From IMG/VR virus record IMGVR_UViG_3300045971_000577, positions 305,146-369,145 of that record: a stretch of 64,000 nt of DNA; one strand, given 5' to 3'. Below the pieces are notes generated by a model. That model was not told the origin of the DNA, did not search any database, and saw only the letters and a list, made by a program, of their open reading frames with translations. Below, one piece after another: positions 53,932 to 64,000 of this stretch; position 1 is the first letter of the stretch; every line of letters begins with the position of its first letter. The position numbers and the translations under genes are program-made.

Positions 53932-54103
53932 TATGCGACTATAATACAAGATCAACTTGGTCAGATCAAGAGGGACCTATACAGTTTTGGTAAAAAATGG
54001 TTGCGCGGCTTGCCACCCTCGTCAAAATGTTACATCTCTTACAAATCTGTGTGCTGACTGGGATTTTTACGAACTGTTACAACTGTTGCATTTGTTACGT
54101 TTC

Positions 54104-54331
54104 TTACACCTTTACTGGTGCCTCGCCGTTGACTATCCATTGATCAACTGACGCCACGAGGCTAAGCGTTCGCCCACTGTCCCACTGCACAGCCACGTGC
54201 CACTGTCCCAGCACATGCCGTACGTCCAGCACCGTACCCGTTGACCATGGTGGTACGGGGTGGGGGTCGGGACCCATGCCAAGCAGGGTAATGCGTTGAC
54301 CTACGCGGGCGGGTGGAGTAAGCTGCATCAT
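54104..54331 (-). CDS. DUF4314-like protein
   Basis: GQRITLLGMGPDPHPVPPWSTGTV..V.WDSGRTLSL...D; ATG 6 nt after the -10 element. Confidence 0.7.
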   Translation of the reverse strand: MMQLTPPARVGQRITLLGMGPDPHPVPPWSTGTVLDVRHVLGQWHVAVQWDSGRTLSLVASVDQWIVNGEAPVKV

Positions 54332-54337
54332 GTGTAT

Positions 54338-54380
54338 ACTATAGCGCACACCACCCTACACGTCAATCACTGTTACATAT
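54338..54380 (-). promoter_or_regulatory. Early cassette promoter with upstream box
   Basis: ATATGTAACA-4-TTGACG-17-TATAGT. Confidence 0.75.
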
Positions 54381-54390
54381 GCTTACACCT

Positions 54391-54426
54391 GTAAGCACCT
54401 GTAAGCAAACGTAAGCAGATGTAACA
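54391..54426 (+). repeat. Four 10-bp-phased GTAA(G/C) repeats
   Basis: GTAAG at 54391, 54401, 54411; GTAAC at 54421. Confidence 0.8.
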
Positions 54427-54493
54427 ACGGTAAAGGTCTCGCACTGTGCCCGTCATACCTTGGTGACGCTATGAGGCAACGGTGAGCAAACGA

Positions 54494-54514
54494 AAGGGGC
54501 GTTCGCCGCCCCTT
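54494..54514 (-). terminator. Terminator hairpin
   Basis: AAGGGGCG-TTCGC-CGCCCCTT downstream of 54534. Confidence 0.7.
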
Positions 54515-54533
54515 GTCTGTACCCGCGCTGGTC

Positions 54534-54737
54534 TTACTTGATGCTGACGAGGACACCGTCCTTCAGCGTGCCCGTGGCGTACCACTTATGGGGTTGCGGG
54601 TAGTGCGGGCCTTCCAGGGACACCTCGCCGTCTTTGGGGCAGGGGAACGGTCCCGGGCTGTGGCAACGGACTTGCTTGCCATCAGCAATGGCACGCTTCA
54701 CTTCGGCCTTGCTCTTGAAGTTGGTATCGGTGTACAT
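54534..54737 (-). CDS. Small hypothetical protein
   Basis: Own promoter and AAGGA RBS. Confidence 0.75.
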   Translation of the reverse strand: MYTDTNFKSKAEVKRAIADGKQVRCHSPGPFPCPKDGEVSLEGPHYPQPHKWYATGTLKDGVLVSIK

Positions 54738-54744
54738 GGTGCAT

Positions 54745-54806
54745 TCCTTGTTGCGATGTATGTATTATGCAGCGTGGTGCGCTTGCTGTCAACCACTGTT
54801 ACATCT
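54745..54806 (-). promoter_or_regulatory. Early cassette promoter with box and leader
   Basis: AGATGTAACA-4-TTGACA-17-CATAAT-ACATACATCGCAACAAGGA. Confidence 0.85.
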
Positions 54807-54808
54807 TA

Positions 54809-54928
54809 TTACAGCTCGTGCCCGCCACACCAGACCAACCACCAAGTGCGGAAGTCCTCACACCCTGTCAGCGCTCCCTCCCGCATGTACGAGGCGTAGA
54901 AAGCTGGGCTTGCTTGGTGGATACTCAC
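54809..54928 (-). CDS. Small hypothetical protein (39 aa, GTG start)
   Basis: GTGA-coupled to the upstream gene; ends right at the next box. Confidence 0.5.
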   Translation of the reverse strand: MSIHQASPAFYASYMREGALTGCEDFRTWWLVWCGGHEL

Positions 54929-55140
54929 ATATCCCCGGGCAGGTAGTTGCAGCGGTTGCGGTAGCACTTGCCGTCCCACTCCGCCACGCTGATCGTATAG
55001 CCGATGCTGAGGAAGAACATCGCTTCGCCCATTGCCGCTGCTTGCCCAATCTCCATGCTGCGGTCTGGGTAGGCTGCGTCGTAGCTGACCGGGTCCCGGA
55101 TGCTGATGCGGGGCTGGGTCACATCGTATGTGGTGCGCAT
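54925..55140 (-). CDS. Small hypothetical protein
   Basis: Start MRTTYDV after AAGGAG. Confidence 0.7.
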   Translation of the reverse strand: MRTTYDVTQPRISIRDPVSYDAAYPDRSMEIGQAAAMGEAMFFLSIGYTISVAEWDGKCYRNRCNYLPGDM

Positions 55141-55147
55141 GATTGCT

Positions 55148-55211
55148 GCTCCTTGTTGCGATGTTGTTACTATAATGCAACGAACAGGGGTTGTCAACCC
55201 CTGTTACATCT
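55148..55211 (-). promoter_or_regulatory. Early cassette promoter with box and leader
   Basis: AGATGTAACA-4-TTGACA-17-TATAGT-AACAACATCGCAACAAGGAG. Confidence 0.85.
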
Positions 55212-55225
55212 GTCTCGCGTGCTGC

Positions 55226-55513
55226 TCAGCAGACCTTGGCGAAGTAATGCACGACCACAGTGTGCATCGTCTGGGTCTGCCCGTCGGCGTACACGGTGCC
55301 GGGTTGCACTTCACATTCCGCGTCGGGTGAGGCGCACAAATTACGTTCCAGCCGTTGCTTGATTCCCACGGCGCGGTAGGCGTTGTGCTGCTGCGGTGAC
55401 ATGCAACGGAACACAGTCGCGCCGCTTTCCTTCGTGACCAGCACGGCCACATCCGAGGCCTTGATTCCTTCCATCTTGTACGCGAGCAGGATGATTTGGA
55501 TGACGACTTGCAT
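55226..55513 (-). CDS. Small hypothetical protein
   Basis: AAAGGA RBS, own promoter. Confidence 0.7.
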   Translation of the reverse strand: MQVVIQIILLAYKMEGIKASDVAVLVTKESGATVFRCMSPQQHNAYRAVGIKQRLERNLCASPDAECEVQPGTVYADGQTQTMHTVVVHYFAKVC

Positions 55514-55552
55514 GTTGTTTCCTTTGTGTTGCTGCGTTGTTGCAGTGTTTAA

Positions 55553-55595
55553 ACTATAACGCAGGTTGAATGCTTATGCAAGCACTGTTACATTT
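55553..55595 (-). promoter_or_regulatory. Early cassette promoter with box
   Basis: AAATGTAACA-4-TTGCAT-17-TATAGT. Confidence 0.75.
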
Positions 55596-55619
55596 ACTTA
55601 CAAGCTGCCGGCCGGCATA

Positions 55620-56126
55620 AGCCTCGAGGTTAAGGTTAAAGACCTTAGCCCAGTGTCTAGCCCTAGTAGAGGCTTTTGCAACTTAGACTAATTTTTAGAT
55701 CGCAGCTTTAAGTCTGCTGCCGGCGAGCCTCGTGTATGCTCAAGGTCAACCGCGGTTACGTTATGAGGCTTATCGCAATAAGTCTTAGATTCTTGTTGAC
55801 CTGCCCGGACTTTTGCGATAAAATGACATTTATTGCTTGCGCAGAATGACCTACGGCTCTACACGAAAAATAGCCTCACAATGCAAAAGGCAACTACAAG
55901 TGGTCTATAGATCAACGTGTGAGGCTTTGCTGCAAAGCCCTAGATTCTTAGATCAGTTGTCTGTAAGCCTCACAGACGCGTTTTAAGATCACAAGCGGTC
56001 GCTTGCTCAGCTCTTGAGGCTTTGCGGGCAGAGCTCTGTCTGTGTGGTCAAGTGCGAGCAAACCCCTGTAAGCCTCACTTGTGGCCCAGTTACTGGGCAA
56101 AGACCTAATCTTTAGTTAGCGAGGCA
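55620..56126. repeat. Array of five AGCCTC...GAGGC(T/A) inverted pairs
   Basis: AGCCTC at 55620, 55726, 55872, 55966, 56071; GAGGC at 55669, 55765, 55921, 56016, 56121. Confidence 0.8.
55796..55824 (+). promoter_or_regulatory. Sigma70 promoter facing non-coding DNA
   Basis: TTGACC-17-TAAAAT. Confidence 0.55.
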
Positions 56127-56164
56127 GCGGTGGTCAAACGACTGGGCACCCGTAAGTGCCCAGT
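55831..56164 (+). ncRNA. Candidate ~330-nt structured ncRNA
   Basis: Promoter at 55796, no ORF of 60 aa or more, three repeated stems, closing hairpin ACTGGGCAC-6-GTGCCCAGT (56141-56164). Confidence 0.35.
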
Positions 56165-56205
56165 GCTCAAAAGAACCGCTTGTAGGGGCGTTTAGCCCCC
56201 TTGCC

Positions 56206-56433
56206 CTACCAGGGCTCGCACATATTGGGAAACGTGTTCGTCTCCTCCAGCACCGTCAACGCCCGCGCCGCTGCTGCGTAGGCCTCGTCTTCCGTGTCCC
56301 AGATCGGCGCGCTGGCGCAGTTGTTGGCGAGGTATTCCTGGCCCGGGTCGCCAGCAAATGTGGAGAAGCACGAACGCCACTTGCCGTTGGCTGCCTGTTC
56401 GGGCGCGCTGACTTCGGTGCGGATCTTGATCAT
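56206..56433 (-). CDS. Small hypothetical protein
   Basis: AAGGAG RBS, own promoter. Confidence 0.75.
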   Translation of the reverse strand: MIKIRTEVSAPEQAANGKWRSCFSTFAGDPGQEYLANNCASAPIWDTEDEAYAAAARALTVLEETNTFPNMCEPW

Positions 56434-56438
56434 GCTGT

Positions 56439-56502
56439 GCTCCTTGTTGCGATGTTGTTACTATAACGGAGTTGGGAGGCTCCGTCAAGCACTGTTACAT
56501 CT
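56439..56502 (-). promoter_or_regulatory. Early cassette promoter with box and leader
   Basis: AGATGTAACA-4-TTGACG-17-TATAGT-AACAACATCGCAACAAGGAG. Confidence 0.85.
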
Positions 56503-56701
56503 ATTTCTTCACAGCGTCAGCAACGGCTTCGTAGGAGTCAGTCGCCACCTCGATGGTCTTGTCCGTCGCCACCGAGATCGCCTTCGAGGCTTTCTTCACC
56601 TCGGACTGGTTGTCCTTGTAGAGGATGATGCCTTGGCCCGCCAGCAGCAGGGCAACGATGCTGGCGATGGCGCCCACAAACACATTCTTGAACGTCTTCA
56701 T
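56501..56701 (-). CDS. Small single-TM protein
   Basis: N-terminal hydrophobic helix; its stop overlaps the next box. Confidence 0.75.
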   Translation of the reverse strand: MKTFKNVFVGAIASIVALLLAGQGIILYKDNQSEVKKASKAISVATDKTIEVATDSYEAVADAVKK

Positions 56702-56728
56702 CTGTATTCCTTAAGTTGCAATGTCACA

Positions 56729-56771
56729 ATAATAGCTGCATACGGGCCGTCTGTCAACCCTTATTACATCT
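56729..56771 (-). promoter_or_regulatory. Early cassette promoter with box
   Basis: AGATGTAATA-4-TTGACA-17-TATTAT. Confidence 0.8.
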
Positions 56772-56943
56772 GCTTACACCACTTCTCTTCCTCGCACAAC
56801 AGCTCGTCGTCAGTGGCGTCGTCATTGAGGTAACGCTCACCGTCTTCAAAATCGCCTTCCTCACCGTCAGCTTCGTACTGTTCACGCATTGCGTGGATGA
56901 TGCGCTCGGCCTTCAAGGCGCGCTCTTGCCTGGTGAGTGCCAT
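56764..56943 (-). CDS. Small acidic hypothetical protein
   Basis: Start MALTRQE after AAGGAG. Confidence 0.75.
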   Translation of the reverse strand: MALTRQERALKAERIIHAMREQYEADGEEGDFEDGERYLNDDATDDELLCEEEKWCKQM

Positions 56944-56949
56944 TGTTGG

Positions 56950-57013
56950 CTCCTTGCTGTTGATGTATGTATTATGCAGGCTGGAACAGGGGCTGTCAAC
57001 CCCTGTTACATCT
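56950..57013 (-). promoter_or_regulatory. Early cassette promoter with box and leader
   Basis: AGATGTAACA-4-TTGACA-17-CATAAT-ACATACATCAACAGCAAGGAG. Confidence 0.85.
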
Positions 57014-57116
57014 TTCCAGTGACACGCTTCCACAGCTGGTGGAAGAAGCGCCTCACGCGGTTCTGCATCAGCTCGGCTGCGATTTCGAGGCGAAACTTCA
57101 TGTAGTCAGTGTTCAT
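57006..57116 (-). CDS. Small hypothetical protein (36 aa)
   Basis: MNTDYMKF starts 1 nt after the upstream stop; its own stop lies inside the box. Confidence 0.5.
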   Translation of the reverse strand: MNTDYMKFRLEIAAELMQNRVRRFFHQLWKRVTGKM

Positions 57117-57117
57117 G

Positions 57118-57315
57118 TTAGGCCTGCTGGATGTGTTGCGCGACGATGCGGGCGGCGCAGTCCTCGCCCTGGGCCATGTCGATCGCGCCCTGCTCCACGA
57201 GGTTGTAGCACAAGTCGCCGCCGTCGTAGAAGCCGTACTGCTCCTCCACAATCTTGTCGACCTTCTCCGAGAAGTCGTGCATGACTGCGTGCTGTGCCAT
57301 TGTGGTGCGGGGCAT
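57118..57315 (-). CDS. Small hypothetical protein
   Basis: AAGGAG RBS, own promoter. Confidence 0.75.
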   Translation of the reverse strand: MPRTTMAQHAVMHDFSEKVDKIVEEQYGFYDGGDLCYNLVEQGAIDMAQGEDCAARIVAQHIQQA

Positions 57316-57321
57316 GCTGTG

Positions 57322-57370
57322 CTCCTTGTTGCGATGTATGTATTATGCGCGTAGAAGCAGCAGTTGTCAA
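57322..57370 (-). promoter_or_regulatory. Early cassette promoter with leader (no box)
   Basis: TTGACA-17-CATAAT-ACATACATCGCAACAAGGAG. Confidence 0.85.
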
Positions 57371-57612
57371 CCGTAAATCTTCAAGGCCTCATCCATGACG
57401 ATCGTCTCCACACCGCCATCCAGAGGCATCAGGTGGTGCTGCTGGAACAGGACTTCCACGCCGGCGGCCAGCAGCACAGCGGGCATGAGCTTGTACAGAG
57501 GCTGCTGGCCGTTATCCATTTCGCACATCAGGATGTGAGCAACGGTGCGGCACGACCCCACTGGGCAACGGGCGTCACCCAGAATCATTACACGTTGTCC
57601 TATTGCGAGCAT
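57367..57612 (-). CDS. Small hypothetical protein
   Basis: Start MLAIGQR after AAGGAG. Confidence 0.7.
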   Translation of the reverse strand: MLAIGQRVMILGDARCPVGSCRTVAHILMCEMDNGQQPLYKLMPAVLLAAGVEVLFQQHHLMPLDGGVETIVMDEALKIYG

Positions 57613-57617
57613 GTTTG

Positions 57618-57680
57618 CTCCTTGCTGCGATGTGTGTACTTTATTATATAGTGGCTCCAGTGTCAAGCACTGTTACATCT
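57618..57680 (-). promoter_or_regulatory. Early cassette promoter with box and leader
   Basis: AGATGTAACA-4-TTGACA-17-TAAAGT-ACACACATCGCAGCAAGGAG. Confidence 0.8.
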
Positions 57681-57693
57681 GCTTACGCCTGCA

Positions 57694-57779
57694 CTGCCTC
57701 ATTCATCGGTCCAAGACCATTGAGCCACTACATGCGAGGCTGCTGCTGCCTCATTCATCGGTCCAAGACCATTGAGCCA
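57694..57779 (+). repeat. 34-bp direct repeat, two copies, 18-bp spacer
   Basis: CTGCCTCATTCATCGGTCCAAGACCATTGAGCCA at 57694 and 57746. Confidence 0.9.
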
Positions 57780-57807
57780 ACGCGGTGAGACCGCGTGACG
57801 ATCCGCC

Positions 57808-57949
57808 AGATGTAACAAGGTGTAACAACGGTTGCATTGATGCGCAGTGGTGTTATAGTTATGACATGGAGACAGCAGTGCAACAGCAAGCAAACAAGCA
57901 AAACTGTTACACTTTAGTTGTTGTCCAAAGCGCCCCAAAGAGTTATAGT
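57808..57949 (+). promoter_or_regulatory. Two tandem rightward promoters, the first with a double box
   Basis: AGATGTAACA-AGGTGTAACA-4-TTGCAT-16-TATAGT; TTGTCC-17-TATAGT. Confidence 0.7.
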
Positions 57950-57994
57950 TTAGTCACTGCAACACACGCTGCAAAGCAGCAAGAAAGGTAGACC

Positions 57995-58534
57995 ATGGAC
58001 AAGGGAATCCGCCCGTACGTGAACGCCAAGTTCATCGAGCTCAACGCCCAGCGCAAGGCGGGCACGCTGACCAACACGCAGTTCCGCAAGAACGTGATGT
58101 GCGACGCGATGGAAGCGTTTGGCATCACCCTGGCGAGCGCCGCGACGCACTACAACCATGCGTTCCAGGCGGTGAAGGCGGCGACACCGACGGAAGTGGA
58201 AGGCCTGGGCCGCCCCGACGACAAGAAGGGCGGGCGCAAGCGCAAGGAAGTCGCAGCCCCGACGGTGGCCAGCGTCATCCCCGTGGACCCGGCCGCGCTG
58301 CTGCAAGGGCTGCTGAATGCCCCGGCTGCGGTGCAGGTGGAGACGGCGCAAGCCGTGGAAACGCCCGCAGCCGACCCCAACGACGCCGGCGAGACGGGCG
58401 AAGTGCAGACGGTGTTCAACGTGTGCAAGAAGTCCGACGGCAGCGTGGTGGCAGAAGGCGTGAGCCTGGAAGAAGCCAAGGCGCTGGTGGAAGCGGCGGC
58501 CAAGGCCAAGAAGGCCAAGCTGTACTGGGTCTAA
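57995..58534 (+). CDS. Hypothetical protein, MDKGIR paralogue A (possible HTH-like DNA binder)
   Basis: FRKNVM...FGITLASAATHYN..GLGRP; paralogue at 61642-62070. Confidence 0.8.
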   Translation: MDKGIRPYVNAKFIELNAQRKAGTLTNTQFRKNVMCDAMEAFGITLASAATHYNHAFQAVKAATPTEVEGLGRPDDKKGGRKRKEVAAPTVASVIPVDPAALLQGLLNAPAAVQVETAQAVETPAADPNDAGETGEVQTVFNVCKKSDGSVVAEGVSLEEAKALVEAAAKAKKAKLYWV

Positions 58535-58550
58535 GCACCCAAGGTGGGAA

Positions 58551-58570
58551 GGGGGCGCAAGCCCCCTATT
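58551..58570 (+). terminator. Terminator hairpin
   Basis: GGGGGC-GCAA-GCCCCC-TATT. Confidence 0.65.
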
Positions 58571-58613
58571 CGCGCGACCAAACCCAGGTCAGAATGCAAG
58601 AGAGGAATCCAAA

Positions 58614-58808
58614 ATGATCAGTGTGATTCTGGTTGATGGAACTACCCGCATGCACATGCCGAGCAGCCGGTGGTCATTGGACGTGCAGGCCTCGTTGGCT
58701 CAGAAGGGCCACCAGCTGCAAGACCTCGGACCTGCTCCGGAGAACGACCCGCGCGATGAGGCCGAGAAGGCACGCGTCATGGAGCTTCTCGACTCCACAG
58801 GGCTGTAG
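58614..58808 (+). CDS. Small hypothetical protein
   Basis: GAGGA RBS. Confidence 0.6.
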   Translation: MISVILVDGTTRMHMPSSRWSLDVQASLAQKGHQLQDLGPAPENDPRDEAEKARVMELLDSTGL

Positions 58809-58815
58809 CAAGATC

Positions 58816-58920
58816 AGCCTCGGAACACGTCGTGAGATCGCTGATCCGACCTTCCGAGGCTACCCTGCGACATGCCTCGGGCGCGCTGTCGAGGCCCGTT
58901 GATCCTACCGCCCGAGGCAT
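58816..58920. repeat. Two GCCTC...GAGGC stem elements
   Basis: AGCCTCGGAA/TTCCGAGGCT (10 bp) and ATGCCTCGGGCG/CGCCCGAGGCAT (12 bp). Confidence 0.85.
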
Positions 58921-58961
58921 GTAACAAGATGTAACGGGGCAAGATGTAACTGGATGTAACA
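58920..58961 (+). repeat. Four TGTAAC boxes with no promoter
   Basis: TGTAAC at 58920, 58930, 58945, 58955. Confidence 0.85.
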
Positions 58962-59133
58962 ATCCAGTTCCGAGATTGAAACCCGTGCAGGCTTTCTACA
59001 CAGGAAACCTATTCAAGAGAAAAGGCCTATTAGGCCTAATCTCGTTTCCGAATCACACTACCCGGGATGCTTGCAGCTAGCGTTTAGCTATGCATTAGCC
59101 ATTTTCTGGCTAATACATTCGGCTACTTCGTGC

Positions 59134-59382
59134 TTACAGCACAAAGCCGTTGACGCACGGGGACGGGGCAAGCTCGGGGTCGCTAAACATGTCCGCCAGC
59201 ACCATGTCCATCTGGCAGTCATCCGTCTCGGGATCGTCAGCTGCCAGAACAGCATCGCCAAGGGCAGCGGCAACGCGCTTGCGTTGCCGCTCGTTGATCA
59301 CGATCGTGTACGTCCCGGGGTCGGGCATGCTGTGCTCGATGGGCATCTCGTAGGGCTTGAGCGTTGCGGGCGTGATGGGCAT
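59134..59382 (-). CDS. Small hypothetical protein
   Basis: AGGA RBS; promoter TTGCAT-17-TATACT at 59408-59436. Confidence 0.7.
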   Translation of the reverse strand: MPITPATLKPYEMPIEHSMPDPGTYTIVINERQRKRVAAALGDAVLAADDPETDDCQMDMVLADMFSDPELAPSPCVNGFVL

Positions 59383-59566
59383 GCTGTGTCCTAGTTGCTA
59401 TGCTTACAGTATAATGCAGAGCAGGAAGCAATGCAACCTGCTGTTTGATCTCAAGCTGCAAAGGCCTCTAGGCGTTTAGGCTCATAGGCCAAGATCCTGT
59501 GCGAGAACTTGTCGTAGGATTTGGACCTGTATTTCCAAATCTGGTCACGAATTTTAAATCGGAAAG

Positions 59567-59812
59567 TTAGGCAGTGTCTTTTGACCGCATGCACTCGCAC
59601 TCGTGTTGCTCAAGCTGAGTAAGCGTATCCGGCTTTGCTTCGCGTGCATTCGCTGGGTCGTTAGCCCACTTGCGGTCTTGCTCTACAAAATGCTTCTCGC
59701 CGTACACACAAAGCCCGACCGCCAGCAGGGCGAGGAGTGCCCCGCCCATGTGTGCAGTTGTTAGACCGTACAGGGCAATGAAGCCAAACAGGAGTGCCAA
59801 GCTGCGCATCAT
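59567..59812 (-). CDS. Small membrane protein
   Basis: Start MMRSLALL, ATGA-coupled; hydrophobic hairpin. Confidence 0.65.
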   Translation of the reverse strand: MMRSLALLFGFIALYGLTTAHMGGALLALLAVGLCVYGEKHFVEQDRKWANDPANAREAKPDTLTQLEQHECECMRSKDTA

Positions 59813-60051
59813 GACTTCCTGAACACCACGATGTTGGGCGCGACCTGCTCGATGAAGTACCAGGCGCCAAACAAGAACGCCAGGATGTTGATCACAGGGC
59901 AGAGAGTTACTGTGAGTCCAATGAGCAGGTTTGACAGCGTCAAGGTCTTCTCGCTCTCCAGCGTGGCATGCTTCATCTCGTAATAGGTGCAGAAGCCGAG
60001 CATGCCACCAGTCAGCAGCACGCACGCCAGGTAGAGCAAAAAGAAGCTCAT
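59809..60051 (-). CDS. Two-TM membrane protein
   Basis: Start MSFFLLY, ATGA-coupled. Confidence 0.7.
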   Translation of the reverse strand: MSFFLLYLACVLLTGGMLGFCTYYEMKHATLESEKTLTLSNLLIGLTVTLCPVINILAFLFGAWYFIEQVAPNIVVFRKS

Positions 60052-60326
60052 GCCATCAGCCCCTCGTAGATGTGCTTGTTGTTGTTGATCAGCGCCAGCA
60101 TCTCGCAAATTTGCTTGAACACACGCACGGCCTCCTCGTCGAACTCCTTGTACAAGAAGTCAACGTCGGTGATCTGCGCCCAAGGTACGTCGACATCGTA
60201 CCGGTTCCAATTGGGCCTGTGCAAGTCGTCAAGCATCACATTCACCCCGCGATGGTGGATGTCCATGACGATTACGCGAGTGTCGTCACTCAGCGTCACG
60301 TTCTCAGTGCGGGTGATTGTGTTCAT
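60048..60326 (-). CDS. Hypothetical protein (probably leaderless)
   Basis: TTGACA-17-TACAAT (60333-60361), then 6 nt and ATG. Confidence 0.75.
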   Translation of the reverse strand: MNTITRTENVTLSDDTRVIVMDIHHRGVNVMLDDLHRPNWNRYDVDVPWAQITDVDFLYKEFDEEAVRVFKQICEMLALINNNKHIYEGLMA

Positions 60327-60338
60327 GTTTGTATTGTA

Positions 60339-60464
60339 TTAGTCCTGCTGCGGTTTGTCAACAGGCACTTCGGTTTGTTTGGGCTGTTCCTGACCTTCCA
60401 TTTGTTCCAGGAAGTCGTCAAGGTCATTGTCGGGAATGCTGCCGTGTTCTTGTTGTTTGGTCAT
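60339..60464 (-). CDS. 41-aa acidic peptide (not in the ORF track)
   Basis: MTKQQEHGSIPDNDLDDFLEQME..; AGGAG RBS; promoter TTGACT-17-TATAAT at 60485-60513. Confidence 0.6.
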   Translation of the reverse strand: MTKQQEHGSIPDNDLDDFLEQMEGQEQPKQTEVPVDKPQQD

Positions 60465-60509
60465 TTCCTTCTCCTGCTGTTAGTATTATACTTAGCAGAA
60501 TGGAAATAG

Positions 60510-60908
60510 TCAACGGCGGGCTATCTGATCCTGCGGCCACTTCGCCCTTACCTGGTAGCGGCGTAGCTCTGCAGGAGTGCTGAACTGTTGGTGTGCATTG
60601 TAGAACCAATACTGCTGAGCTTCACGCTCGTGCAGGATCACAATCGGCTCATACCGGAACTCGGGGAACTGGGTTGCCGTAACATCGACTACATGATCAG
60701 CAGTGATTACGAACACATGGGCGCCCACATCGTCTTCGGACATGTGCATCTCTGCCTCGATCCCTGCTACCTTGAGTCGCTTGTGCAACTCCGAGGAAGC
60801 GATTGCACAGAACCCGCAGAGCGTGTGCTTCGAGTACAGCGGGTCCTGCGCTTCGGCCCACTCACGCACCTCTTGCGCGATGTTGCGAATGCGTTGCAGC
60901 GTGCTCAT
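60510..60908 (-). CDS. Putative papain/transglutaminase-like Cys-His-Asp enzyme
   Basis: Start MSTLQR (ATGA-coupled); GFCAIAS, AHVFV, VVDVTATQF. Confidence 0.6.
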   Translation of the reverse strand: MSTLQRIRNIAQEVREWAEAQDPLYSKHTLCGFCAIASSELHKRLKVAGIEAEMHMSEDDVGAHVFVITADHVVDVTATQFPEFRYEPIVILHEREAQQYWFYNAHQQFSTPAELRRYQVRAKWPQDQIARR

Positions 60909-61132
60909 CCGAAGCAGATGCCCTTCTTGACCATCGTGTCCGGCGACAGCGCGGAGCACACGATCTTGTGCTGGGTGGTATTGTAGAGCAGGTAGTCCTT
61001 CATGCAACCTGCAGCACGGTACAGCAGCACCATGCGCGATTCAGCGATGTCGACGCTCTCACCGCGGTGGATGAGTTTGTCCTTCTCCATGCTGTCGTCT
61101 GCATCGGTTTCGTAGACTTCGTACATAGCCAA
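60905..61132 (-). CDS. Small hypothetical protein
   Basis: AAGGAG leader; likely start at the second Met. Confidence 0.7.
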   Translation of the reverse strand: MAMYEVYETDADDSMEKDKLIHRGESVDIAESRMVLLYRAAGCMKDYLLYNTTQHKIVCSALSPDTMVKKGICFG

Positions 61133-61181
61133 CTCCTTGCTGCGATGTATGTATTATGCAGGGACTAGCCCTGCATGTCTA
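61133..61181 (-). promoter_or_regulatory. Early cassette promoter with leader
   Basis: TAGACA-17-CATAAT-ACATACATCGCAGCAAGGAG. Confidence 0.8.
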
Positions 61182-61187
61182 CCACTT

Positions 61188-61469
61188 TTAGGCGGCCGGC
61201 CCCACGCCGCGGATGTAGTAGCTCAAGTACGTGGCCCGCGTGCTGAAGCCCTTTGCGGTCAGTTCCTTGTTGATTTCTTCCACCACAGGGCGGATGTGCT
61301 GGGCGCTGCCGACATCGAACGCCACGTAGCGGACGTTGCAACCGCGGCGCTCACGCGGGGCCAGGCCCACCGGCAAGTCGGTGTAGCTCTTCATGTACTT
61401 GATACGTGCGTTGTCCAACGCCTTGCGCACCACTGCGCGGAACTCCAGGGTAGTTGCAGGATAGGGCAT
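61188..61469 (-). CDS. Small basic hypothetical protein
   Basis: Start MPYPATT after AGGA. Confidence 0.7.
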   Translation of the reverse strand: MPYPATTLEFRAVVRKALDNARIKYMKSYTDLPVGLAPRERRGCNVRYVAFDVGSAQHIRPVVEEINKELTAKGFSTRATYLSYYIRGVGPAA

Positions 61470-61475
61470 TGTGTG

Positions 61476-61540
61476 TCCTGTATGTTGCGATGTATGTATT
61501 ATGCGCTGATAGGACACACAGGTCAACCTCTGTTACATCT
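61476..61540 (-). promoter_or_regulatory. Early cassette promoter with box and leader
   Basis: AGATGTAACA-4-TTGACC-17-CATAAT-ACATACATCGCAAC. Confidence 0.85.
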
Positions 61541-61602
61541 CTGGCCTCACAGCATGTTTTGCGATCGATCAAGATGCATTGCGAGGCATCTTAGGCCAAA
61601 CG

Positions 61603-61623
61603 AAAAGGGGCCGTAGCCCCTTT
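61603..61623 (-). terminator. Terminator
   Basis: AAAAGGGGC-CGTA-GCCCCTTT. Confidence 0.75.
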
Positions 61624-61641
61624 GTGCCCTTGCTTGTTGCG

Positions 61642-62070
61642 TTAGGCTGCCGTGCCTTCCAGCACCACGGGCGTCACCGCCAGTTGCAGCAGCTCGCAAT
61701 CCGTCACATCGGACATCGTGGCTGGCGTGCCTTCCAGCAGCAGGGCAGCCGTTTCAGCCGGGTCCAGCGCGACGATCGGGATGCCAGCAGCGGTCTCGGT
61801 CTTCTTCTTGCGCCCGCCGTTGTTCTTGCCTTCCGGGCGGCCCAGGCCGCTGACCAGTTCCGGCGTCGCGGCCTTCACCAGTTGGAGCGCGTCGTTGTAG
61901 TGCGTCGCCGCGGATGCCAGCGTGCAGCCGAACTGTTCCATCAGCGTCGCCATGACGTGCTTGCGGAACGTGGTGTTGCCCTTGTCGCCAGTGAACGCCT
62001 GGCCCTTGCGGCGCAGTTCGTTTTGCTCGACGAACAGGTTGCGAGCGAAGCTGCGAATTCCCTTATCCAT
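61642..62070 (-). CDS. Hypothetical protein, MDKGIR paralogue B
   Basis: FRKHVM...FGCTLASAATHYN..GLGRP. Confidence 0.8.
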   Translation of the reverse strand: MDKGIRSFARNLFVEQNELRRKGQAFTGDKGNTTFRKHVMATLMEQFGCTLASAATHYNDALQLVKAATPELVSGLGRPEGKNNGGRKKKTETAAGIPIVALDPAETAALLLEGTPATMSDVTDCELLQLAVTPVVLEGTAA

Positions 62071-62114
62071 TTGTGACTCCTTCTTGCTACTGTGTAGCGT
62101 GTTGCGATGTAGTT

Positions 62115-62157
62115 ACTATAGCAGCGGTGGGCCTAGTGGTCTACCACTGTTACATCT
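62115..62157 (-). promoter_or_regulatory. Early cassette promoter with box
   Basis: AGATGTAACA-4-TAGACC-17-TATAGT. Confidence 0.8.
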
Positions 62158-62158
62158 T

Positions 62159-62437
62159 TTAGGCCAGCAGCACCACCGTGAGTTGCACGCGGAACGTGAT
62201 GCCCAGGTGGTTGAACAACTCCTCGAGGATGAAATCTGCAAGGTCGACGTCACAACGCATGAGGCTGTCGACGTACTGATCGAAACCCGGGATGTCGTCC
62301 TTCATCAGCGGGTCCCGCATGCAGTCGAGGCTGATGAGCACCTTCTGCTTGCCTTCCGGGCTGAAGCTGTTGCTGTCGTCCTGTTCGAAACGGCGACGCA
62401 GGTTGCTGATGCTGTGAATGACAGTGTCGACTGACAT
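62159..62437 (-). CDS. Small hypothetical protein
   Basis: Own promoter TAGACA-17-CATAAT at 62466-62494. Confidence 0.7.
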   Translation of the reverse strand: MSVDTVIHSISNLRRRFEQDDSNSFSPEGKQKVLISLDCMRDPLMKDDIPGFDQYVDSLMRCDVDLADFILEELFNHLGITFRVQLTVVLLA

Positions 62438-62504
62438 GGCGTTGCTTTGTTGCTGCGATGTATATATTATGCAGGGCTGGTCCCTGCATGTCTACCACTT
62501 TATG

Positions 62505-63368
62505 TCAGCCCATGAAGCTCAACGGAATGCCAACCTTGGCGCAGTTTGCCTTGAAGGTCCCACGTGCCAGCTGGCGATCGTAGCCGTTGGCGGCAATCAT
62601 GGCAGCGATGATCGTTTCGTAACCGTGGCCAGCGCGGTAACCCTGCAGCATGATGCGACGGCTGATGCTCGCCTTGCTTTCACCTGCAGCGGGCAGCACG
62701 TTGGGCGCAGGCAGGATGCAGCGCGGAGCAGGGGGCAGCAAGCGCGGAGCAACAGCGGGCACATACACACGGGCTTGCACAGGCAGCGCAGGGGCCACGG
62801 TCATCGTGGGCTGCTTCACGATGGGTGCCGCAAGCGTCTGCCCACGCGCACCAACGATGCTGTACGCACAGGCTGCGTGGATGCTGCCCTTGTTGTGGCG
62901 CAGGCGGATGGTAGTGCCCAGCTGGATCTTGCGGTGGTGACGGTCACCAACGCGCACCGTGTGCCCCTTGTCGCTGGTGTATTCGTACGTGATGCCCTTG
63001 CCGTACACCACTTCCTCTTGGTGACGCGTGCGACCGCTGCCGCCCAGGGCGAGGCAGATGCGCTCCCAGCCCGCGTCGTGGTTCTTGCCCAAGTCCGGCT
63101 GGATGAAGCACAGGATGTGCGCGTATTCGTGCGGCACAGTGCTGTTGAGCACGTGATCGAAAGCTTCACGCGACAGCATGTCGGTGTTGAACTTCACGAT
63201 GTAGTTGGACATCACCGGGTCGCGGTACTTCAGCCCGTGTGCCTTGCCAGCCGCCTTGCCCTTCAGGTCGAAGCTGACGCGCACGCGGGACATGTCCACG
63301 TTGTAGAGCTGATACGCACGGGCAACGACTTCCTTGCACTTGGCAAGGATTTGTTCACGGGGCGTCAT
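62505..63368 (-). CDS. SprT-like zinc metalloprotease with C-terminal extension
   Basis: KAAGKA, TVPHEYAHIL, HDAGW. Confidence 0.85.
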   Translation of the reverse strand: MTPREQILAKCKEVVARAYQLYNVDMSRVRVSFDLKGKAAGKAHGLKYRDPVMSNYIVKFNTDMLSREAFDHVLNSTVPHEYAHILCFIQPDLGKNHDAGWERICLALGGSGRTRHQEEVVYGKGITYEYTSDKGHTVRVGDRHHRKIQLGTTIRLRHNKGSIHAACAYSIVGARGQTLAAPIVKQPTMTVAPALPVQARVYVPAVAPRLLPPAPRCILPAPNVLPAAGESKASISRRIMLQGYRAGHGYETIIAAMIAANGYDRQLARGTFKANCAKVGIPLSFMG

Positions 63369-63377
63369 TTTTGCTTG

Positions 63378-63443
63378 CTCCTGTTTGCTGCGATATATGT
63401 ATTATGCAGTCAGGAACCGGTCTGGTCGACCACTGTTACATCT
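63378..63443 (-). promoter_or_regulatory. Early cassette promoter with box and leader
   Basis: AGATGTAACA-4-TCGACC-17-CATAAT-ACATATATCGCAGCAAACAGGAG. Confidence 0.8.
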
Positions 63444-63446
63444 GCC

Positions 63447-63554
63447 TCACACTGTGTCGTCAATGCTCGTGAGCAGGAACAAGAGGCCAAAGACCCAGTG
63501 CCCTGTGTAGAAACAGAACACCGCCATCAGCAGAGGAGTGGTTTGAAACTTCAC
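63447..63554 (-). CDS. 35-aa membrane micro-protein (GTG start)
   Basis: MKFQTTPLLMAVFCFYTGHWVFGLLFLLTSIDDTV. Confidence 0.55.
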   Translation of the reverse strand: MKFQTTPLLMAVFCFYTGHWVFGLLFLLTSIDDTV

Positions 63555-63564
63555 GTGCCTTGCC

Positions 63565-63666
63565 TTAGATGCTTGCGGCAATGACAAAGCACACGAGGGC
63601 GATCACCCAGTGTCCAGTGACAAGGGCGATGACGCCAGCGAAAACCAATGCTACGGATGTGCTCAT
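63565..63666 (-). CDS. 33-aa membrane micro-protein
   Basis: MSTSVALVFAGVIALVTGHWVIALVCFVIAASI; GAGG RBS. Confidence 0.6.
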   Translation of the reverse strand: MSTSVALVFAGVIALVTGHWVIALVCFVIAASI

Positions 63667-63668
63667 GC

Positions 63669-63923
63669 TTACCTCGGGCTGCTAACACGGAAGTGGAAAT
63701 CACGCGGGGCACGACCTTCGAGACGTGCCAGCTGACGTTCGATGGCCTGAACATCAGCGATCTGCGATTGGATGCGGACCATGGCGCCGGGCCACGAATC
63801 ACCGAAGCGGGCCACCTCGCCGTTGTGCTCCGAGATGACTTCGTAGAGACCCTCCAGGGCTTCCCAGTCAGTCGCTTCGTTGGCGTAACGGATGAACTCG
63901 TCACGCGTCATCGGCTTCGACAT
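63669..63923 (-). CDS. Small hypothetical protein
   Basis: Start MSKPMTR after AAGGAG. Confidence 0.75.
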   Translation of the reverse strand: MSKPMTRDEFIRYANEATDWEALEGLYEVISEHNGEVARFGDSWPGAMVRIQSQIADVQAIERQLARLEGRAPRDFHFRVSSPR

Positions 63924-63930
63924 GTTGTTG

Positions 63931-63980
63931 GCTCCTTGCTGCGATGTCTGTATTATGCACGCAAGGAGCCACCCTGTCAA
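63931..63980 (-). promoter_or_regulatory. Early cassette promoter with leader
   Basis: TTGACA-17-CATAAT-ACAGACATCGCAGCAAGGAG. Confidence 0.85.
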
Positions 63981-64000
63981 CCGCTAGTTGAACGCCTGCC

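What the first reader, a model, noticed from the sequence alone, without database searches (positions are those of the whole stretch)
55796..56164. Candidate early ncRNA with three repeated stem units
Seen: a + strand TTGACC-17-TAAAAT promoter opposite the surrounding genes, about 330 nt with no ORF of 60 aa or more, three AGCCTCA...GAGGC units ~100 nt apart, CTGTAAGCCTCAC twice, and a 9-bp closing hairpin. Known: phages use repeat RNAs as decoys (pseudo-ToxI antitoxin mimics, RNA anti-CRISPRs). Inference: a decoy or sponge RNA.
Basis: partly seen in the sequence, partly recalled or inferred. Interest (0 to 1): 0.65.

Follow-up and report, generated by a model that had tools for sequence, protein, structure and literature searches.

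The report
Gene-free early cassette with antisense promoter
A 692-base gene-free stretch in the early region of a 369-kb pond jumbo phage holds five copies of the phage's own intergenic hairpin unit around a strongly conserved backward-facing promoter. It is most likely an unannotated early non-coding RNA locus, not a toxin-antitoxin or CRISPR decoy.

Summary
The gene-free gap runs from 55514 to 56205 (692 nt) and holds five hairpin units, not three. Two of them lie upstream of the + strand promoter.

The unit (GCCTC(R)C, about 30-40 nt, G(Y)GAGGC) is not special to this locus. About 20 copies lie in the phage's 65-kb high-GC early region. Typically one sits between the terminator of one small gene and the promoter of the next, a more elaborate version of the PeSL promoter/terminator cassettes of T4-type phages.

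The '9-bp closing hairpin' is the terminator of the convergent gene. In two relatives it scores as an intrinsic terminator on that gene's strand.

Six distinct related metagenomic phages keep the whole layout: five units, all spacings, the promoter and a 12-nt 5' leader. Neighbouring genes are swapped around it, so it is under selection. The TTGACC-17-TAAAAT promoter is the best-conserved block.

Best reading, about 0.4: a host-polymerase-driven early non-coding RNA. Its function is unknown. A DNA-level role for the units is a serious rival (0.28).

No RNA data exist, and covariation on six sequences is inconclusive. ToxI-like and CRISPR-repeat-like decoy readings fail their tests.

The parts
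55553..55592 (-). Promoter of the downstream small gene P0001 (55226-55513, - strand). The -35 TTGCAT is at 55581-55576 and the -10 TATAGT at 55558-55553. The family's upstream TGTAAC motif is at 55592-55587.
   Evidence: Read. The same TGTAAC plus -35/-10 layout sits in front of the other small - strand genes. CTGTTACAT occurs 15 times in the genome against 1.4 expected.
55619..55675 (.). Unit A: AAGCCTC ... GAGGCTT, arm distance 48. It is read as the upstream unit of the P0001 promoter.
   Evidence: It is present at the same place in all six relatives.
55681..55715 (.). Conserved AT-rich spacer between units A and B (ACTTAGACTAATTTTTAGATC...TTAAGTCT).
   Evidence: Nearly identical in the window, L038, L044 and L047. 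There is no second copy in the genome. Function unknown.
55725..55771 (.). Unit B: GAGCCTCGTG ... TATGAGGCTT, arm distance 38, with three G-U pairs if read as + strand RNA. It is read as the upstream unit of the + strand promoter.
55796..55824 (+). Sigma-70-type promoter TTGACC-17-TAAAAT, facing opposite to all neighbouring genes. The expected start is about 55828-55832.
   Evidence: 10 of 12. Both hexamers and TTTTGCG(R) in the spacer are invariant in six relatives. An inverted repeat at 55770-55778/55813-55821 brackets it (I16).
55833..55844 (+). Conserved 5' leader TTGCTTGCGCAG of the proposed RNA.
   Evidence: Identical in 5 of 6 genomes while the next 25 nt are diverged beyond recognition between the two subgroups. 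It is unique in the genome.
55872..55926 (+). Unit C: AGCCTCACA ... TGTGAGGCT, arm distance 48. It is the first hairpin of the proposed RNA.
   Evidence: The stem is kept in 92% of cells across six sequences, with A-U, G-U and G-C at two pairs.
55923..55959 (+). C-D spacer. It holds a small hairpin (GGCTTTGC/GCAAAGCC in the window, CTGGTC/GATCAG-type in relatives) ending in the conserved GATCAGTTG. It may be a weak internal terminator.
   Evidence: I24; columns 110-135. In L042 the equivalent hairpin scores as terminator-like on this strand.
55965..56022 (+). Unit D: AAGCCTCA ... TGAGGCTT, arm distance 49.
56070..56125 (+). Unit E: AAGCCTCAC ... GCGAGGC, arm distance 49. With the 10-nt linker AGCGGTGGTC it forms the family's usual 'unit next to terminator' module.
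   Evidence: The same linker plus terminator follows single units elsewhere (window 54436, 61544; L041 1446).
56141..56164 (-). It is the terminator of the convergent gene P0002 and may also stop or pause the + strand RNA.
   Evidence: I18. In L042 and L044 it scores as an intrinsic terminator on the gene strand (GGGCAC..GTGCCC TTTCGTTTG). In the window the U-tract is weaker and the scan does not list it.
56185..56199 (.). Hairpin H2 (GGGGC GTTTA GCCCC), 6 nt from the stop codon of P0002 (56206-56208). It is conserved in relatives.
   Evidence: Neither strand has a U-tract after it.

Best explanation
The locus is a conserved cassette without a gene in the early region of a 369-kb jumbo myophage. 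That region is transcribed by the host polymerase.

**How the region is built (shown).** It consists of small gene cassettes. Each is bounded by a composite of terminator, 10-nt linker, one palindromic unit (GCCTC(R)C, 30-40 nt, G(Y)GAGGC), TGTAAC motif and sigma-70 promoter. At this locus five units sit between the terminator of gene P0002 and the promoter of gene P0001. In the middle is a promoter that fires the other way.

**How I read the five units.** Units A and B are the upstream units of two divergent promoters, as at two other divergent promoter pairs of the genome. Unit E belongs to the terminator of P0002.

**What it most likely does (inferred).** Host sigma-70 RNA polymerase starts at about 55830. 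It makes a non-coding RNA with a conserved single-stranded 5' leader (UUGCUUGCGCAG), then hairpin units C and D, and in the long form E. A weak internal stop may lie after unit C, near 55960, which would give about 130 nt. Otherwise the RNA runs convergently into the hairpins H1 and H2 behind P0002, giving about 335-370 nt.

**Committed mechanism.** This is an early trans-acting regulatory RNA. The conserved leader is the working part, and the hairpins give stability or bind protein. A side effect is convergent-transcription interference with P0002.

**Shown and inferred.** The anatomy, its conservation and the generic nature of the units are shown. The transcript, its ends and its target are inferred.
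For: - **Promoter conservation.** The + strand promoter scores 10 of 12. It is the most conserved block in six distinct relatives whose flanking protein is only 65-78% identical. The 12 nt after the start are identical in 5 of 6, while neighbouring non-coding stretches are saturated with changes.
- **Conserved layout.** The whole architecture is kept: five units and inter-unit spacings of 58-59, 108-111 and 47-48 nt.
- **Kept while neighbours change.** Neighbouring cassettes differ between relatives. Extra genes lie between unit A and P0001 in L038, L042 and L047, and a different right-hand gene in L045.
- **No coding potential.** No ORF is conserved.
- **Structure.** The region folds better than shuffles (z -3.2). 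Unit stems are kept in 83% of cells against 27-52% for slid partners. 21 of 29 units fold better as + strand RNA.
- **Precedent.** The closest cultured relative is PA5oct (portal 59% identical). By RNA-seq it has ORF-less early-region loci giving abundant RNAs of 236 and 451 nt (PMC7318152). A sigma-70-like promoter lies 19 nt before the longer one.
Against: - **No RNA data.** The only runs that hold the sequence are two pond DNA metagenomes.
- **Strand tests do not decide.** The - strand folds as well or better: z -4.8, and alifold gives -21.9 against -16.0.
- **Covariation is weak.** It is not significant against shuffles (65/500 and 95/500). It cannot choose between the two possible pairing schemes.
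- **Units are generic.** They mostly sit where they would not be transcribed, after a terminator and before a promoter. Two of the five here are upstream of the promoter.
- **Length classes.** The arm distance falls in two classes 10 nt apart (37-40 and 48-49), which fits DNA helical phasing.
- **No terminator.** No convincing + strand terminator exists.
- **No family.** No Rfam family matches.
- **No target.** No complement of the leader exists in the phage. Pairing with early 5' UTRs is not better than for shuffles.
Confidence: 0.4

Rival explanations
1. The array works at the DNA level. The units are sites, in double-stranded DNA or as transient single-strand hairpins, for a factor that marks cassette boundaries. 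That factor could be a roadblock or insulator against read-through, a regulator of early promoters, or a recombination hotspot. Five units around a promoter would form a strong insulator or control region. Any + strand RNA would be a by-product or serve only local interference.
For: - Units sit after terminators and before promoters, 20 in the 65-kb early region against 7.4 expected. 19 of 20 have an arm distance of 37-40 or 48-49 nt. That is one DNA turn apart.
- All arms within a genome share one consensus (AAGCCTCAC in the window, CCCTCGCG in L044). This points to sequence-specific recognition.
- Many dispersed units have only 5-6 bp stems around 30-nt loops, which are weak as hairpins.
- GATC is enriched inside units (8 of 20, p 0.004).
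- Units A and B are upstream of the promoter.
- F-to-F spacings in the window are 106, 146, 94 and 105, all near whole turns.
Against: - Within-unit complementarity beyond the core exceeds between-unit complementarity (permutation p 0.005). Independent binding sites would not need that.
- This does not explain why the promoter and the first 20 transcribed bases are the best-conserved part.
- No candidate binding protein or recombinase was found: no Y1 transposase, tyrosine recombinase or serine recombinase.
- Unit-to-promoter distance varies from 14 to 71 nt.
Confidence: 0.28
2. It is a scar of cassette shuffling. Recombination between the repeated promoter/terminator/unit modules deleted the genes that once lay between them. 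That left a pile of boundary elements and an orphan promoter with no function of its own.
For: - In T4-type phages, PeSL cassettes recombine, delete the DNA between them, and cluster in the most variable segments (PMC2839356, PMC4122927).
- Relatives differ by whole cassettes right beside the array.
- The D-E spacer holds module-like fragments: GTGGTCAAG in the window, and TGTAAC and TATAAT in relatives.
- Contig joints between promoter cassettes are seen in the pond assemblies.
Against: - The same five units, the same spacings and the same promoter are kept in six diverged genomes while the neighbours change.
- Some blocks are near-invariant next to saturated ones. That indicates selection rather than shared recent descent.
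Confidence: 0.12
3. It is a replication origin, an injection-stop site or a packaging site. The model would be a promoter plus repeated protein-binding or hairpin elements in a gene-free, relatively AT-rich stretch, as in T4 oriF/oriG, the T5 injection-stop region or P1 pac.
For: - It is probably the largest gene-free gap in the genome. A crude ORF cover leaves only 10 gaps of 300 nt or more, the longest 459 nt, and splits this gap with spurious ORFs of up to 50 aa.
- It holds a promoter with no gene.
- It has an AT-rich conserved spacer and GATC-containing motifs.
- It lies about 1.6 kb from the boundary between the high-GC early region and the rest of the genome.
Against: - The repeated element is generic to all early cassettes, not specific to this locus.
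- Cumulative GC skew is monotonic and gives no origin signal.
- No initiator or terminase gene is adjacent; the neighbours are orphan small proteins.
- The comparisons with T4, T5 and P1 come from my own knowledge, not from a test.
Confidence: 0.07
4. This is the first reader's idea: a decoy or sponge RNA that mimics a type III antitoxin (ToxI) or a CRISPR repeat.
For: It is a promoter-driven, ORF-less, repeat-containing RNA candidate in a phage early region.
Against: - There is no tandem direct repeat.
- The units share only 5-10-nt inverted arms.
- No Rfam CRISPR-DR or other family matches.
- No defence-related protein lies nearby.
- The same units occur as single copies all over the early region, outside any such RNA.
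Confidence: 0.04

Closest known systems
PeSLs (promoter-early stem-loops) of T4-type phages (Arbiol et al. 2010, PMC2839356; Comeau et al. 2014, PMC4122927)
   Same: Both are repeated composite cassettes of a strong sigma-70-like early promoter and a stem-loop terminator. Both flank small orphan genes in a variable region. Relatives differ by whole cassettes at these boundaries, and clusters of boundary elements occur without genes.
   Different: Here the composite has an extra element: a 45-60-nt palindromic unit with sequence-specific arms, between the terminator and a TGTAAC motif. This locus is a fivefold cluster that is conserved, not variable. It carries a promoter of a different type (no TGTAAC motif) that faces backwards.
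REP/BIME extragenic palindromes of enterobacteria (from my own knowledge)
   Same: Both are dispersed intergenic palindromic elements found after genes. Both sometimes occur in clusters with alternating orientation of the repeated motif. For both, roles have been proposed in the RNA (stability) and in the DNA (protein binding).
   Different: REPs are themselves compact 20-40-nt palindromes, mobilised by RAYT transposases. Here the arms are 5-10 nt and lie 30-40 nt apart. No Y1 transposase is encoded. The host is a phage early region.
ORF-less early-region RNAs of Pseudomonas phage PA5oct (ncRNA001, ncRNA002; Lood et al. 2020, PMC7318152)
   Same: PA5oct is the closest cultured relative (portal 59% identical). 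Its ORF-less loci lie among small early genes. A sigma-70-like promoter lies before ncRNA002. The sizes of 236 and 451 nt are similar, and function is unknown.
   Different: There is no significant sequence similarity and no array of like hairpins. Those RNAs run with their neighbours, not against them. They are shown by RNA-seq; this one is not.
Integron attC sites (from my own knowledge)
   Same: Both have one imperfect inverted repeat per cassette, conserved only at its ends, with a variable centre of restricted length. ORF-less cassettes exist in both.
   Different: There is no integrase of any kind in the genome. The attC core GTTRRRY is absent. These cassettes carry their own promoters and terminators.

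Membership tests
Type III antitoxin RNA (ToxI-like) or phage pseudo-ToxI | Tandem, near-identical direct repeats of about 34-45 nt | tested here: not met
   TRF finds no array at minimum score 30. The best direct repeat is 2 copies of 35 nt at 74% identity (D1). A five-unit alignment has only the arm cores invariant.
Type III antitoxin RNA (ToxI-like) or phage pseudo-ToxI | Similarity to the antitoxin repeat of a host ToxN-type system, or an adjacent toxin gene | tested here: inconclusive
   No PADLOC model hits any of nine neighbouring proteins. The host is unknown, so its antitoxin repeats could not be compared.
RNA anti-CRISPR (CRISPR-repeat mimic) | A unit resembling a CRISPR direct repeat | tested here: not met
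   No Rfam family, CRISPR-DR families included, matches at E up to 10 in 54500-57500 or at E up to 1 in four relatives. The units are 45-60-nt inverted-arm elements, not 28-37-nt direct repeats. The host's own repeats are unknown.
PeSL-type early cassette | Strong sigma-70-like promoter combined with a stem-loop terminator, repeated between small orphan genes | tested here: met
   There are 8 strong - strand promoters in 4 kb in front of small genes. Terminator, linker, unit, TGTAAC and promoter composites are seen at window 54436, 61544, 63444 and others. Terminators score in relatives. The neighbours are orphan proteins.
PeSL-type early cassette | Cassette gain and loss between relatives at these elements | tested here: met
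   Relatives carry extra or different cassettes directly beside the array. Recombination itself was not tested.
REP/BIME (REPIN) elements | Dispersed extragenic palindromes with a cognate RAYT (Y1) transposase | tested here: not met
   The units are dispersed and extragenic. PF01797 has no match in the genome, while the control genomes do match.
Integron attC / cassette array | An integron-type tyrosine recombinase and attC core sites | tested here: not met
   PF00589 and PF00239 have no match in the genome. The arm consensus is GCCTC(R)C, not GTTRRRY.
Any described RNA family (Rfam 15) | Covariance-model match | tested here: not met
   Searches give no relevant match. ARAGORN finds no tRNA or tmRNA in the window.
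PA5oct ncRNA001/ncRNA002 | Sequence similarity | tested here: not met
   Local alignment scores are within about 3 sd of shuffles, and only 12-19-nt motif matches are found. No structure-aware comparison was made.
Functional structured RNA in general | Significant covariation supporting one structure on one strand | tested here: inconclusive
   Pairs are kept in 83-84% of cells. Covariation is reached by 65/500 and 95/500 shuffles, and two alternative pairing schemes score alike. The strands are not separable. Only six sequences were available.
Expressed RNA | A + strand transcript with a 5' end near 55830 | not testable with these tools
   The only holders of the sequence are two DNA pond metagenomes kept as contigs.

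The most novel reading that the evidence does not exclude
The early regions of this clade of jumbo phages are organised as a cassette system. The boundaries are marked by a dedicated, sequence-specific hairpin element, attC-like in architecture but without any known recombinase. This locus is a conserved ORF-less cassette that expresses those boundary elements as RNA. It would then titrate or guide the unknown factor that reads them, controlling early-gene insulation, shut-off or cassette exchange.
Probability: 0.1. Interest if true: 0.75.

Novelty: new variant of a known kind. Interest (0 to 1): 0.45.

Why it matters
Jumbo phages carry long early regions of small orphan genes, and how these are organised and regulated is poorly understood. 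This locus shows that one such region is built from cassettes with a richer boundary than the PeSLs of T4-type phages: terminator, specific palindromic unit, TGTAAC motif and promoter.

One gene-free cassette, with a backward promoter and five units, is kept by selection while its neighbours are exchanged. If the RNA is real, it adds a conserved family to the few phage early non-coding RNAs known, alongside the uncharacterised abundant RNAs of PA5oct. It would also give a handle on whatever factor recognises the units.

If the units act in DNA, they are a new kind of phage cassette insulator or recombination site. Either way the finding is a defined, testable element. It is not a defence decoy of a known type.

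Tried and rejected
- **Phage collection, DNA search.** The locus and its right flank gave no match.
- **IMG/VR, flanking proteins.** No relatives were found.
- **IMG/VR, three RNA-specific DNA patterns.** Only chance hits in unrelated contigs.
- **Metagenome scan, wasted.** Its 120+ hits are the promoter of a secreted-protein gene of gut bacteria in human-gut metagenome contigs. They are unrelated to this locus and I did not pursue them.
- **Sequencing runs.** Only two DNA pond metagenomes hold the sequence. Laying their contigs on 54500-57500 showed no variant, inversion or joint inside the locus. This gives no support to an invertible-promoter idea, but contigs drop rare variants.
- **GC skew.** Monotonic, no origin signal.
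- **Homology to PA5oct ncRNAs.** Not significant.
- **Strand assignment.** Folding energy, G-U counts and alifold on both strands are all ambiguous.
- **Covariation.** Two pairing schemes were tested and the result is inconclusive.
- **Trans-pairing.** The RNA does not pair with early 5' UTRs better than shuffles do, and the duplex output looked unreliable. No complement of the conserved blocks exists elsewhere in the genome.
- **Mobile-element and recombinase ideas.** No Y1 transposase, tyrosine recombinase or serine recombinase.
- **Small-protein reading.** The 45-aa ATG ORF at 55846 stops after 16 codons in L045 and has no ATG in L047. ORFs in the relatives' insert lie in different frames.
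- **IHF-site reading of the A-B spacer.** Only 6-7 of 9 consensus positions match, by eye, so I dropped it.
- **Not used.** The large representative protein search, structure prediction and complex prediction. No claim here rests on a protein.

Full report
**Context**

The window is the last 64 kb of a 369,145-bp virus record whose ends overlap by 127 bp, so the assembly is circular. It is a jumbo myophage. It has a T4-type portal, baseplate wedge and tail-fibre proteins. The best portal match in cultured phages is Pseudomonas phage PA5oct at 59% identity. The sequence is held by two pond DNA metagenomes.

The last 10 kb of the window and the first 55 kb or so of the genome form a 65-kb stretch of 52-57% G+C. 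The rest of the genome is about 42%. This stretch is packed with small orphan genes, mostly on the - strand. Each has its own near-consensus sigma-70 promoter (11 promoter-like sites in 4 kb against 2.3 in shuffles; searches find no family for the proteins).

**The observation**

- the + strand TTGACC-17-TAAAAT promoter at 55796-55824;
- no ORF of 60 aa or more;
- three AGCCTCA...GAGGC units;
- CTGTAAGCCTCAC twice;
- the 9-bp hairpin at 56141-56164.

The 7-mer AAGCCTC and its complement occur 16 times in 369 kb, and 7 of those are here.

The description is incomplete in three ways:
- The gene-free gap runs from 55514 to 56205 (692 nt), between the - strand genes P0001 (55226-55513) and P0002 (56206-56433).
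- There are five units with alternating arms, not three: A 55619-55675, B 55725-55771, C 55872-55926, D 55965-56022 and E 56070-56125. The arm-to-arm distances are 48, 38, 48, 49 and 49 nt. A and B lie upstream of the promoter.
- The units share only their arms. TRF sees no tandem repeat, and an alignment of the five has only the cores invariant.

**Relatives**

DNA searches of phage records and protein-guided scans of IMG/VR found nothing. A word search with the two flanking proteins found homologues at 65-78% identity on short metagenomic contigs. Their DNA contains the locus in six distinct versions: L038 (same as L039), L042, L044, L045, L047 and the window.

All six keep the following:
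- the five units;
- arm distances of 47-50 or 37-40 nt;
- inter-unit spacings of 58-59, 108-111 and 47-48 nt;
- the promoter, with both hexamers and TTTTGCG(R) of the spacer invariant;
- the first transcribed bases, TTGCTTGCGCAG, identical in 5 of 6;
- GATCAGTTG before unit D;
- an AT-rich block between A and B;
- the two hairpins behind P0002.

Other stretches, such as the 25 nt after the leader, are diverged beyond recognition between the two subgroups. Relatives have 45-90 extra bases between D and E.

The cassettes on either side differ between relatives. There are extra genes between unit A and P0001, and a different gene on the right in L045. So the array is retained while its neighbours are exchanged.

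**The turn: the unit is generic**

A pattern scan for G[CT]CTC ... GAG[GA]C at 28-52 nt gives 20 hits in the 65-kb early region. Shuffles give 7.4 +/- 2.8. The other 304 kb give 2 hits. 19 of the 20 have arm distances of 37-40 or 48-49 nt, against 1.8 (maximum 6) in shuffles.

Their context is regular. On the coding strand the order is: gene stop, intrinsic terminator, a 10-nt linker, one unit, one or more TGTAAC motifs, -35/-10, 5' UTR, start codon. Examples are at window 54436, 61544 and 63444.

Divergent promoter pairs have two units back to back (window 57696/57748; genome 3111/3164). Two perfect units follow the + strand gene that ends at 58808. The same composites occur in the relatives. 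These include a single-unit cassette in L041 with the same linker, AGCGGTGGTCAAA, that joins unit E to hairpin H1 here.

This is a more elaborate form of the PeSL promoter/terminator cassettes of T4-type phages. Those recombine and shuffle orphan genes (PMC2839356, PMC4122927).

Seen this way the locus has four parts:
- the terminator of P0002 (H1) with its unit E;
- the promoter of P0001 with its unit A;
- a backward-facing promoter with its unit B;
- units C and D, plus conserved spacers, as the payload of that backward cassette.

**The closing hairpin**

In L042 and L044, H1 scores as an intrinsic terminator on the strand of the P0002 homologue (GGGCAC..GTGCCC followed by TTTCGTTTG). In the window the U-tract is weaker (TCGTTTG) and the scan does not list it. 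On the + strand no U-tract follows H1 or H2.

That does not remove the promoter.

**RNA or DNA?**

Points for an RNA:
- The promoter and leader are the best-conserved parts.
- The region folds better than shuffles.
- Unit stems are kept in 83% of cells against 27-52% for slid partners.
- Complementarity beyond the 5-nt core is higher within units than between units (permutation p 0.005, and 0.018 for dispersed units alone). Independent duplex binding sites would not need that.
- 21 of 29 units fold better as + strand RNA.
- PA5oct has abundant ORF-less early-region RNAs of similar size, seen by RNA-seq.

Points against, or for a DNA role:
- There are no RNA data.
- The - strand folds as well.
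- Covariation on six sequences is not significant and cannot choose between F(k)-R(k) and R(k)-F(k+1) pairings.
- Most units sit between a terminator and a promoter.
- The two length classes differ by one helical turn.
- All arms of one genome share a consensus that differs between genomes (AAGCCTCAC against CCCTCGCG). This points to sequence-specific recognition or to gene conversion.
- GATC is enriched inside units (8 of 20, p 0.004).

No transposase or recombinase that could read the units is encoded.

**Known families**

- No Rfam family matches the window locus, four relatives or the PA5oct RNAs.
- No tRNA or tmRNA lies in the window.
- ToxI-type and CRISPR-repeat-type decoys fail their defining features.
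- Similarity to PA5oct ncRNA002 is limited to short motifs (TTAGATCACAAA; TTAGATC..TTGTCTGTAA) and is not significant.

**Verdict**

I rate a functional + strand early non-coding RNA at about 0.4. It would have a conserved 5' leader, hairpin units C-E, and a convergent end at the P0002 terminators. The other readings are:
- a DNA-level boundary or insulator array, 0.28;
- a non-functional shuffling scar, 0.12;
- an origin, packaging or injection-stop site, 0.07;
- a ToxI/CRISPR-type decoy, 0.04.

It is a new variant of known kinds (PeSL-type cassettes; phage early non-coding RNAs). Its value lies in defining a conserved, testable element and a previously undescribed boundary unit in a jumbo-phage early region.

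**Limits of this work**

- Only six sequences were available.
- The host is unknown.
I did not pursue these.

Noticed in passing
window 54000-64000 (genome 359-369 kb, continuing to genome 1-55 kb): There is a sharp composition step. About 65 kb of small-gene early region has 52-63% G+C, while the rest of the 369-kb genome has about 42%. PA5oct has a 39-kb terminal repeat of small early genes. Whether this stretch is a collapsed long terminal repeat or acquired DNA is open.
   Followed up: partly
window 54338-57666 and elsewhere; CTGTTACAT at 15 genome positions: Early promoters share an upstream TGTAAC motif, often repeated at 10-11-nt spacing and up to four times (58919-58960). They also share a 5' UTR of the type ACATCGCAACAAGGAGCA. 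CTGTTACAT occurs 15 times against 1.4 expected.
   Followed up: partly
window 57696-57792: A tandem duplication of about 52 nt carries two units (GCCTCATTCATCGGTCCAAGACCATTGAGCCA twice). It lies between a - strand and a + strand promoter, at a strand switch of the early genes.
   Followed up: partly
window 58817-58918: Two units with perfect 10- and 14-bp stems (AGCCTCGGAA/TTCCGAGGCT and ACATGCCTCGGGCG/CGCCCGAGGCATGT) directly follow the stop of a 64-aa + strand gene. Four TGTAAC motifs come after them.
   Followed up: partly
genome 45-50 kb and 226-277 kb (outside the window): ARAGORN finds 47 tRNA genes and a permuted tmRNA (tag ANDSFYTEALAA). One tRNA has anticodon CUA, which would read TAG. 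No recoding was looked for.
   Followed up: no
window 32940-42515: A 3191-aa ORF lies among baseplate and tail-fibre genes. It was not analysed.
   Followed up: no
L038 3440-3500, L042 960-1010, L044 1890-1947, L045 860-910, L047 500-540 (read on the - strand of the loci): Relatives carry, left of unit A, a module absent from the window. It has a - strand promoter followed by AGGAGC...ATGCGCTAA, a two-codon mini-ORF (Met-Arg-stop) with a Shine-Dalgarno sequence. After it come further TGTAAC motifs and another CCTC...GAGG unit.
   Followed up: no
L048-L167 (human-gut metagenome contigs): The string TTGACC-N9-TTTTGCGGTAAAAT is also the promoter of a secreted-protein gene (MKAKRW...) in more than 120 gut-bacterial contigs. 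It is a coincidence of strong-promoter sequence and unrelated to the phage.
   Followed up: partly
L038 2543-2775: The P0002 homologue of L038 is out of frame after about 20 codons near a run of G. This could be an assembly error or a broken gene.
   Followed up: no
window 55770-55778 and 55813-55821: A 9-nt perfect inverted repeat (TTATCGCAA/TTGCGATAA) brackets the -35 and spacer of the + strand promoter. L042, L038 and L044 have ACCGCAA/TTGCGGT, which is one compensatory change. L045 and L047 lack the left arm. It could be an operator or a hairpin in a read-through transcript.
   Followed up: partly
window 54745-54806 and 57313-57350: Pond-metagenome contigs of other, related phages join or break at the repeated promoter cassettes. 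One loose end reads ...GCAAAGCCTCTCGGGG, which carries the unit arm.
   Followed up: no
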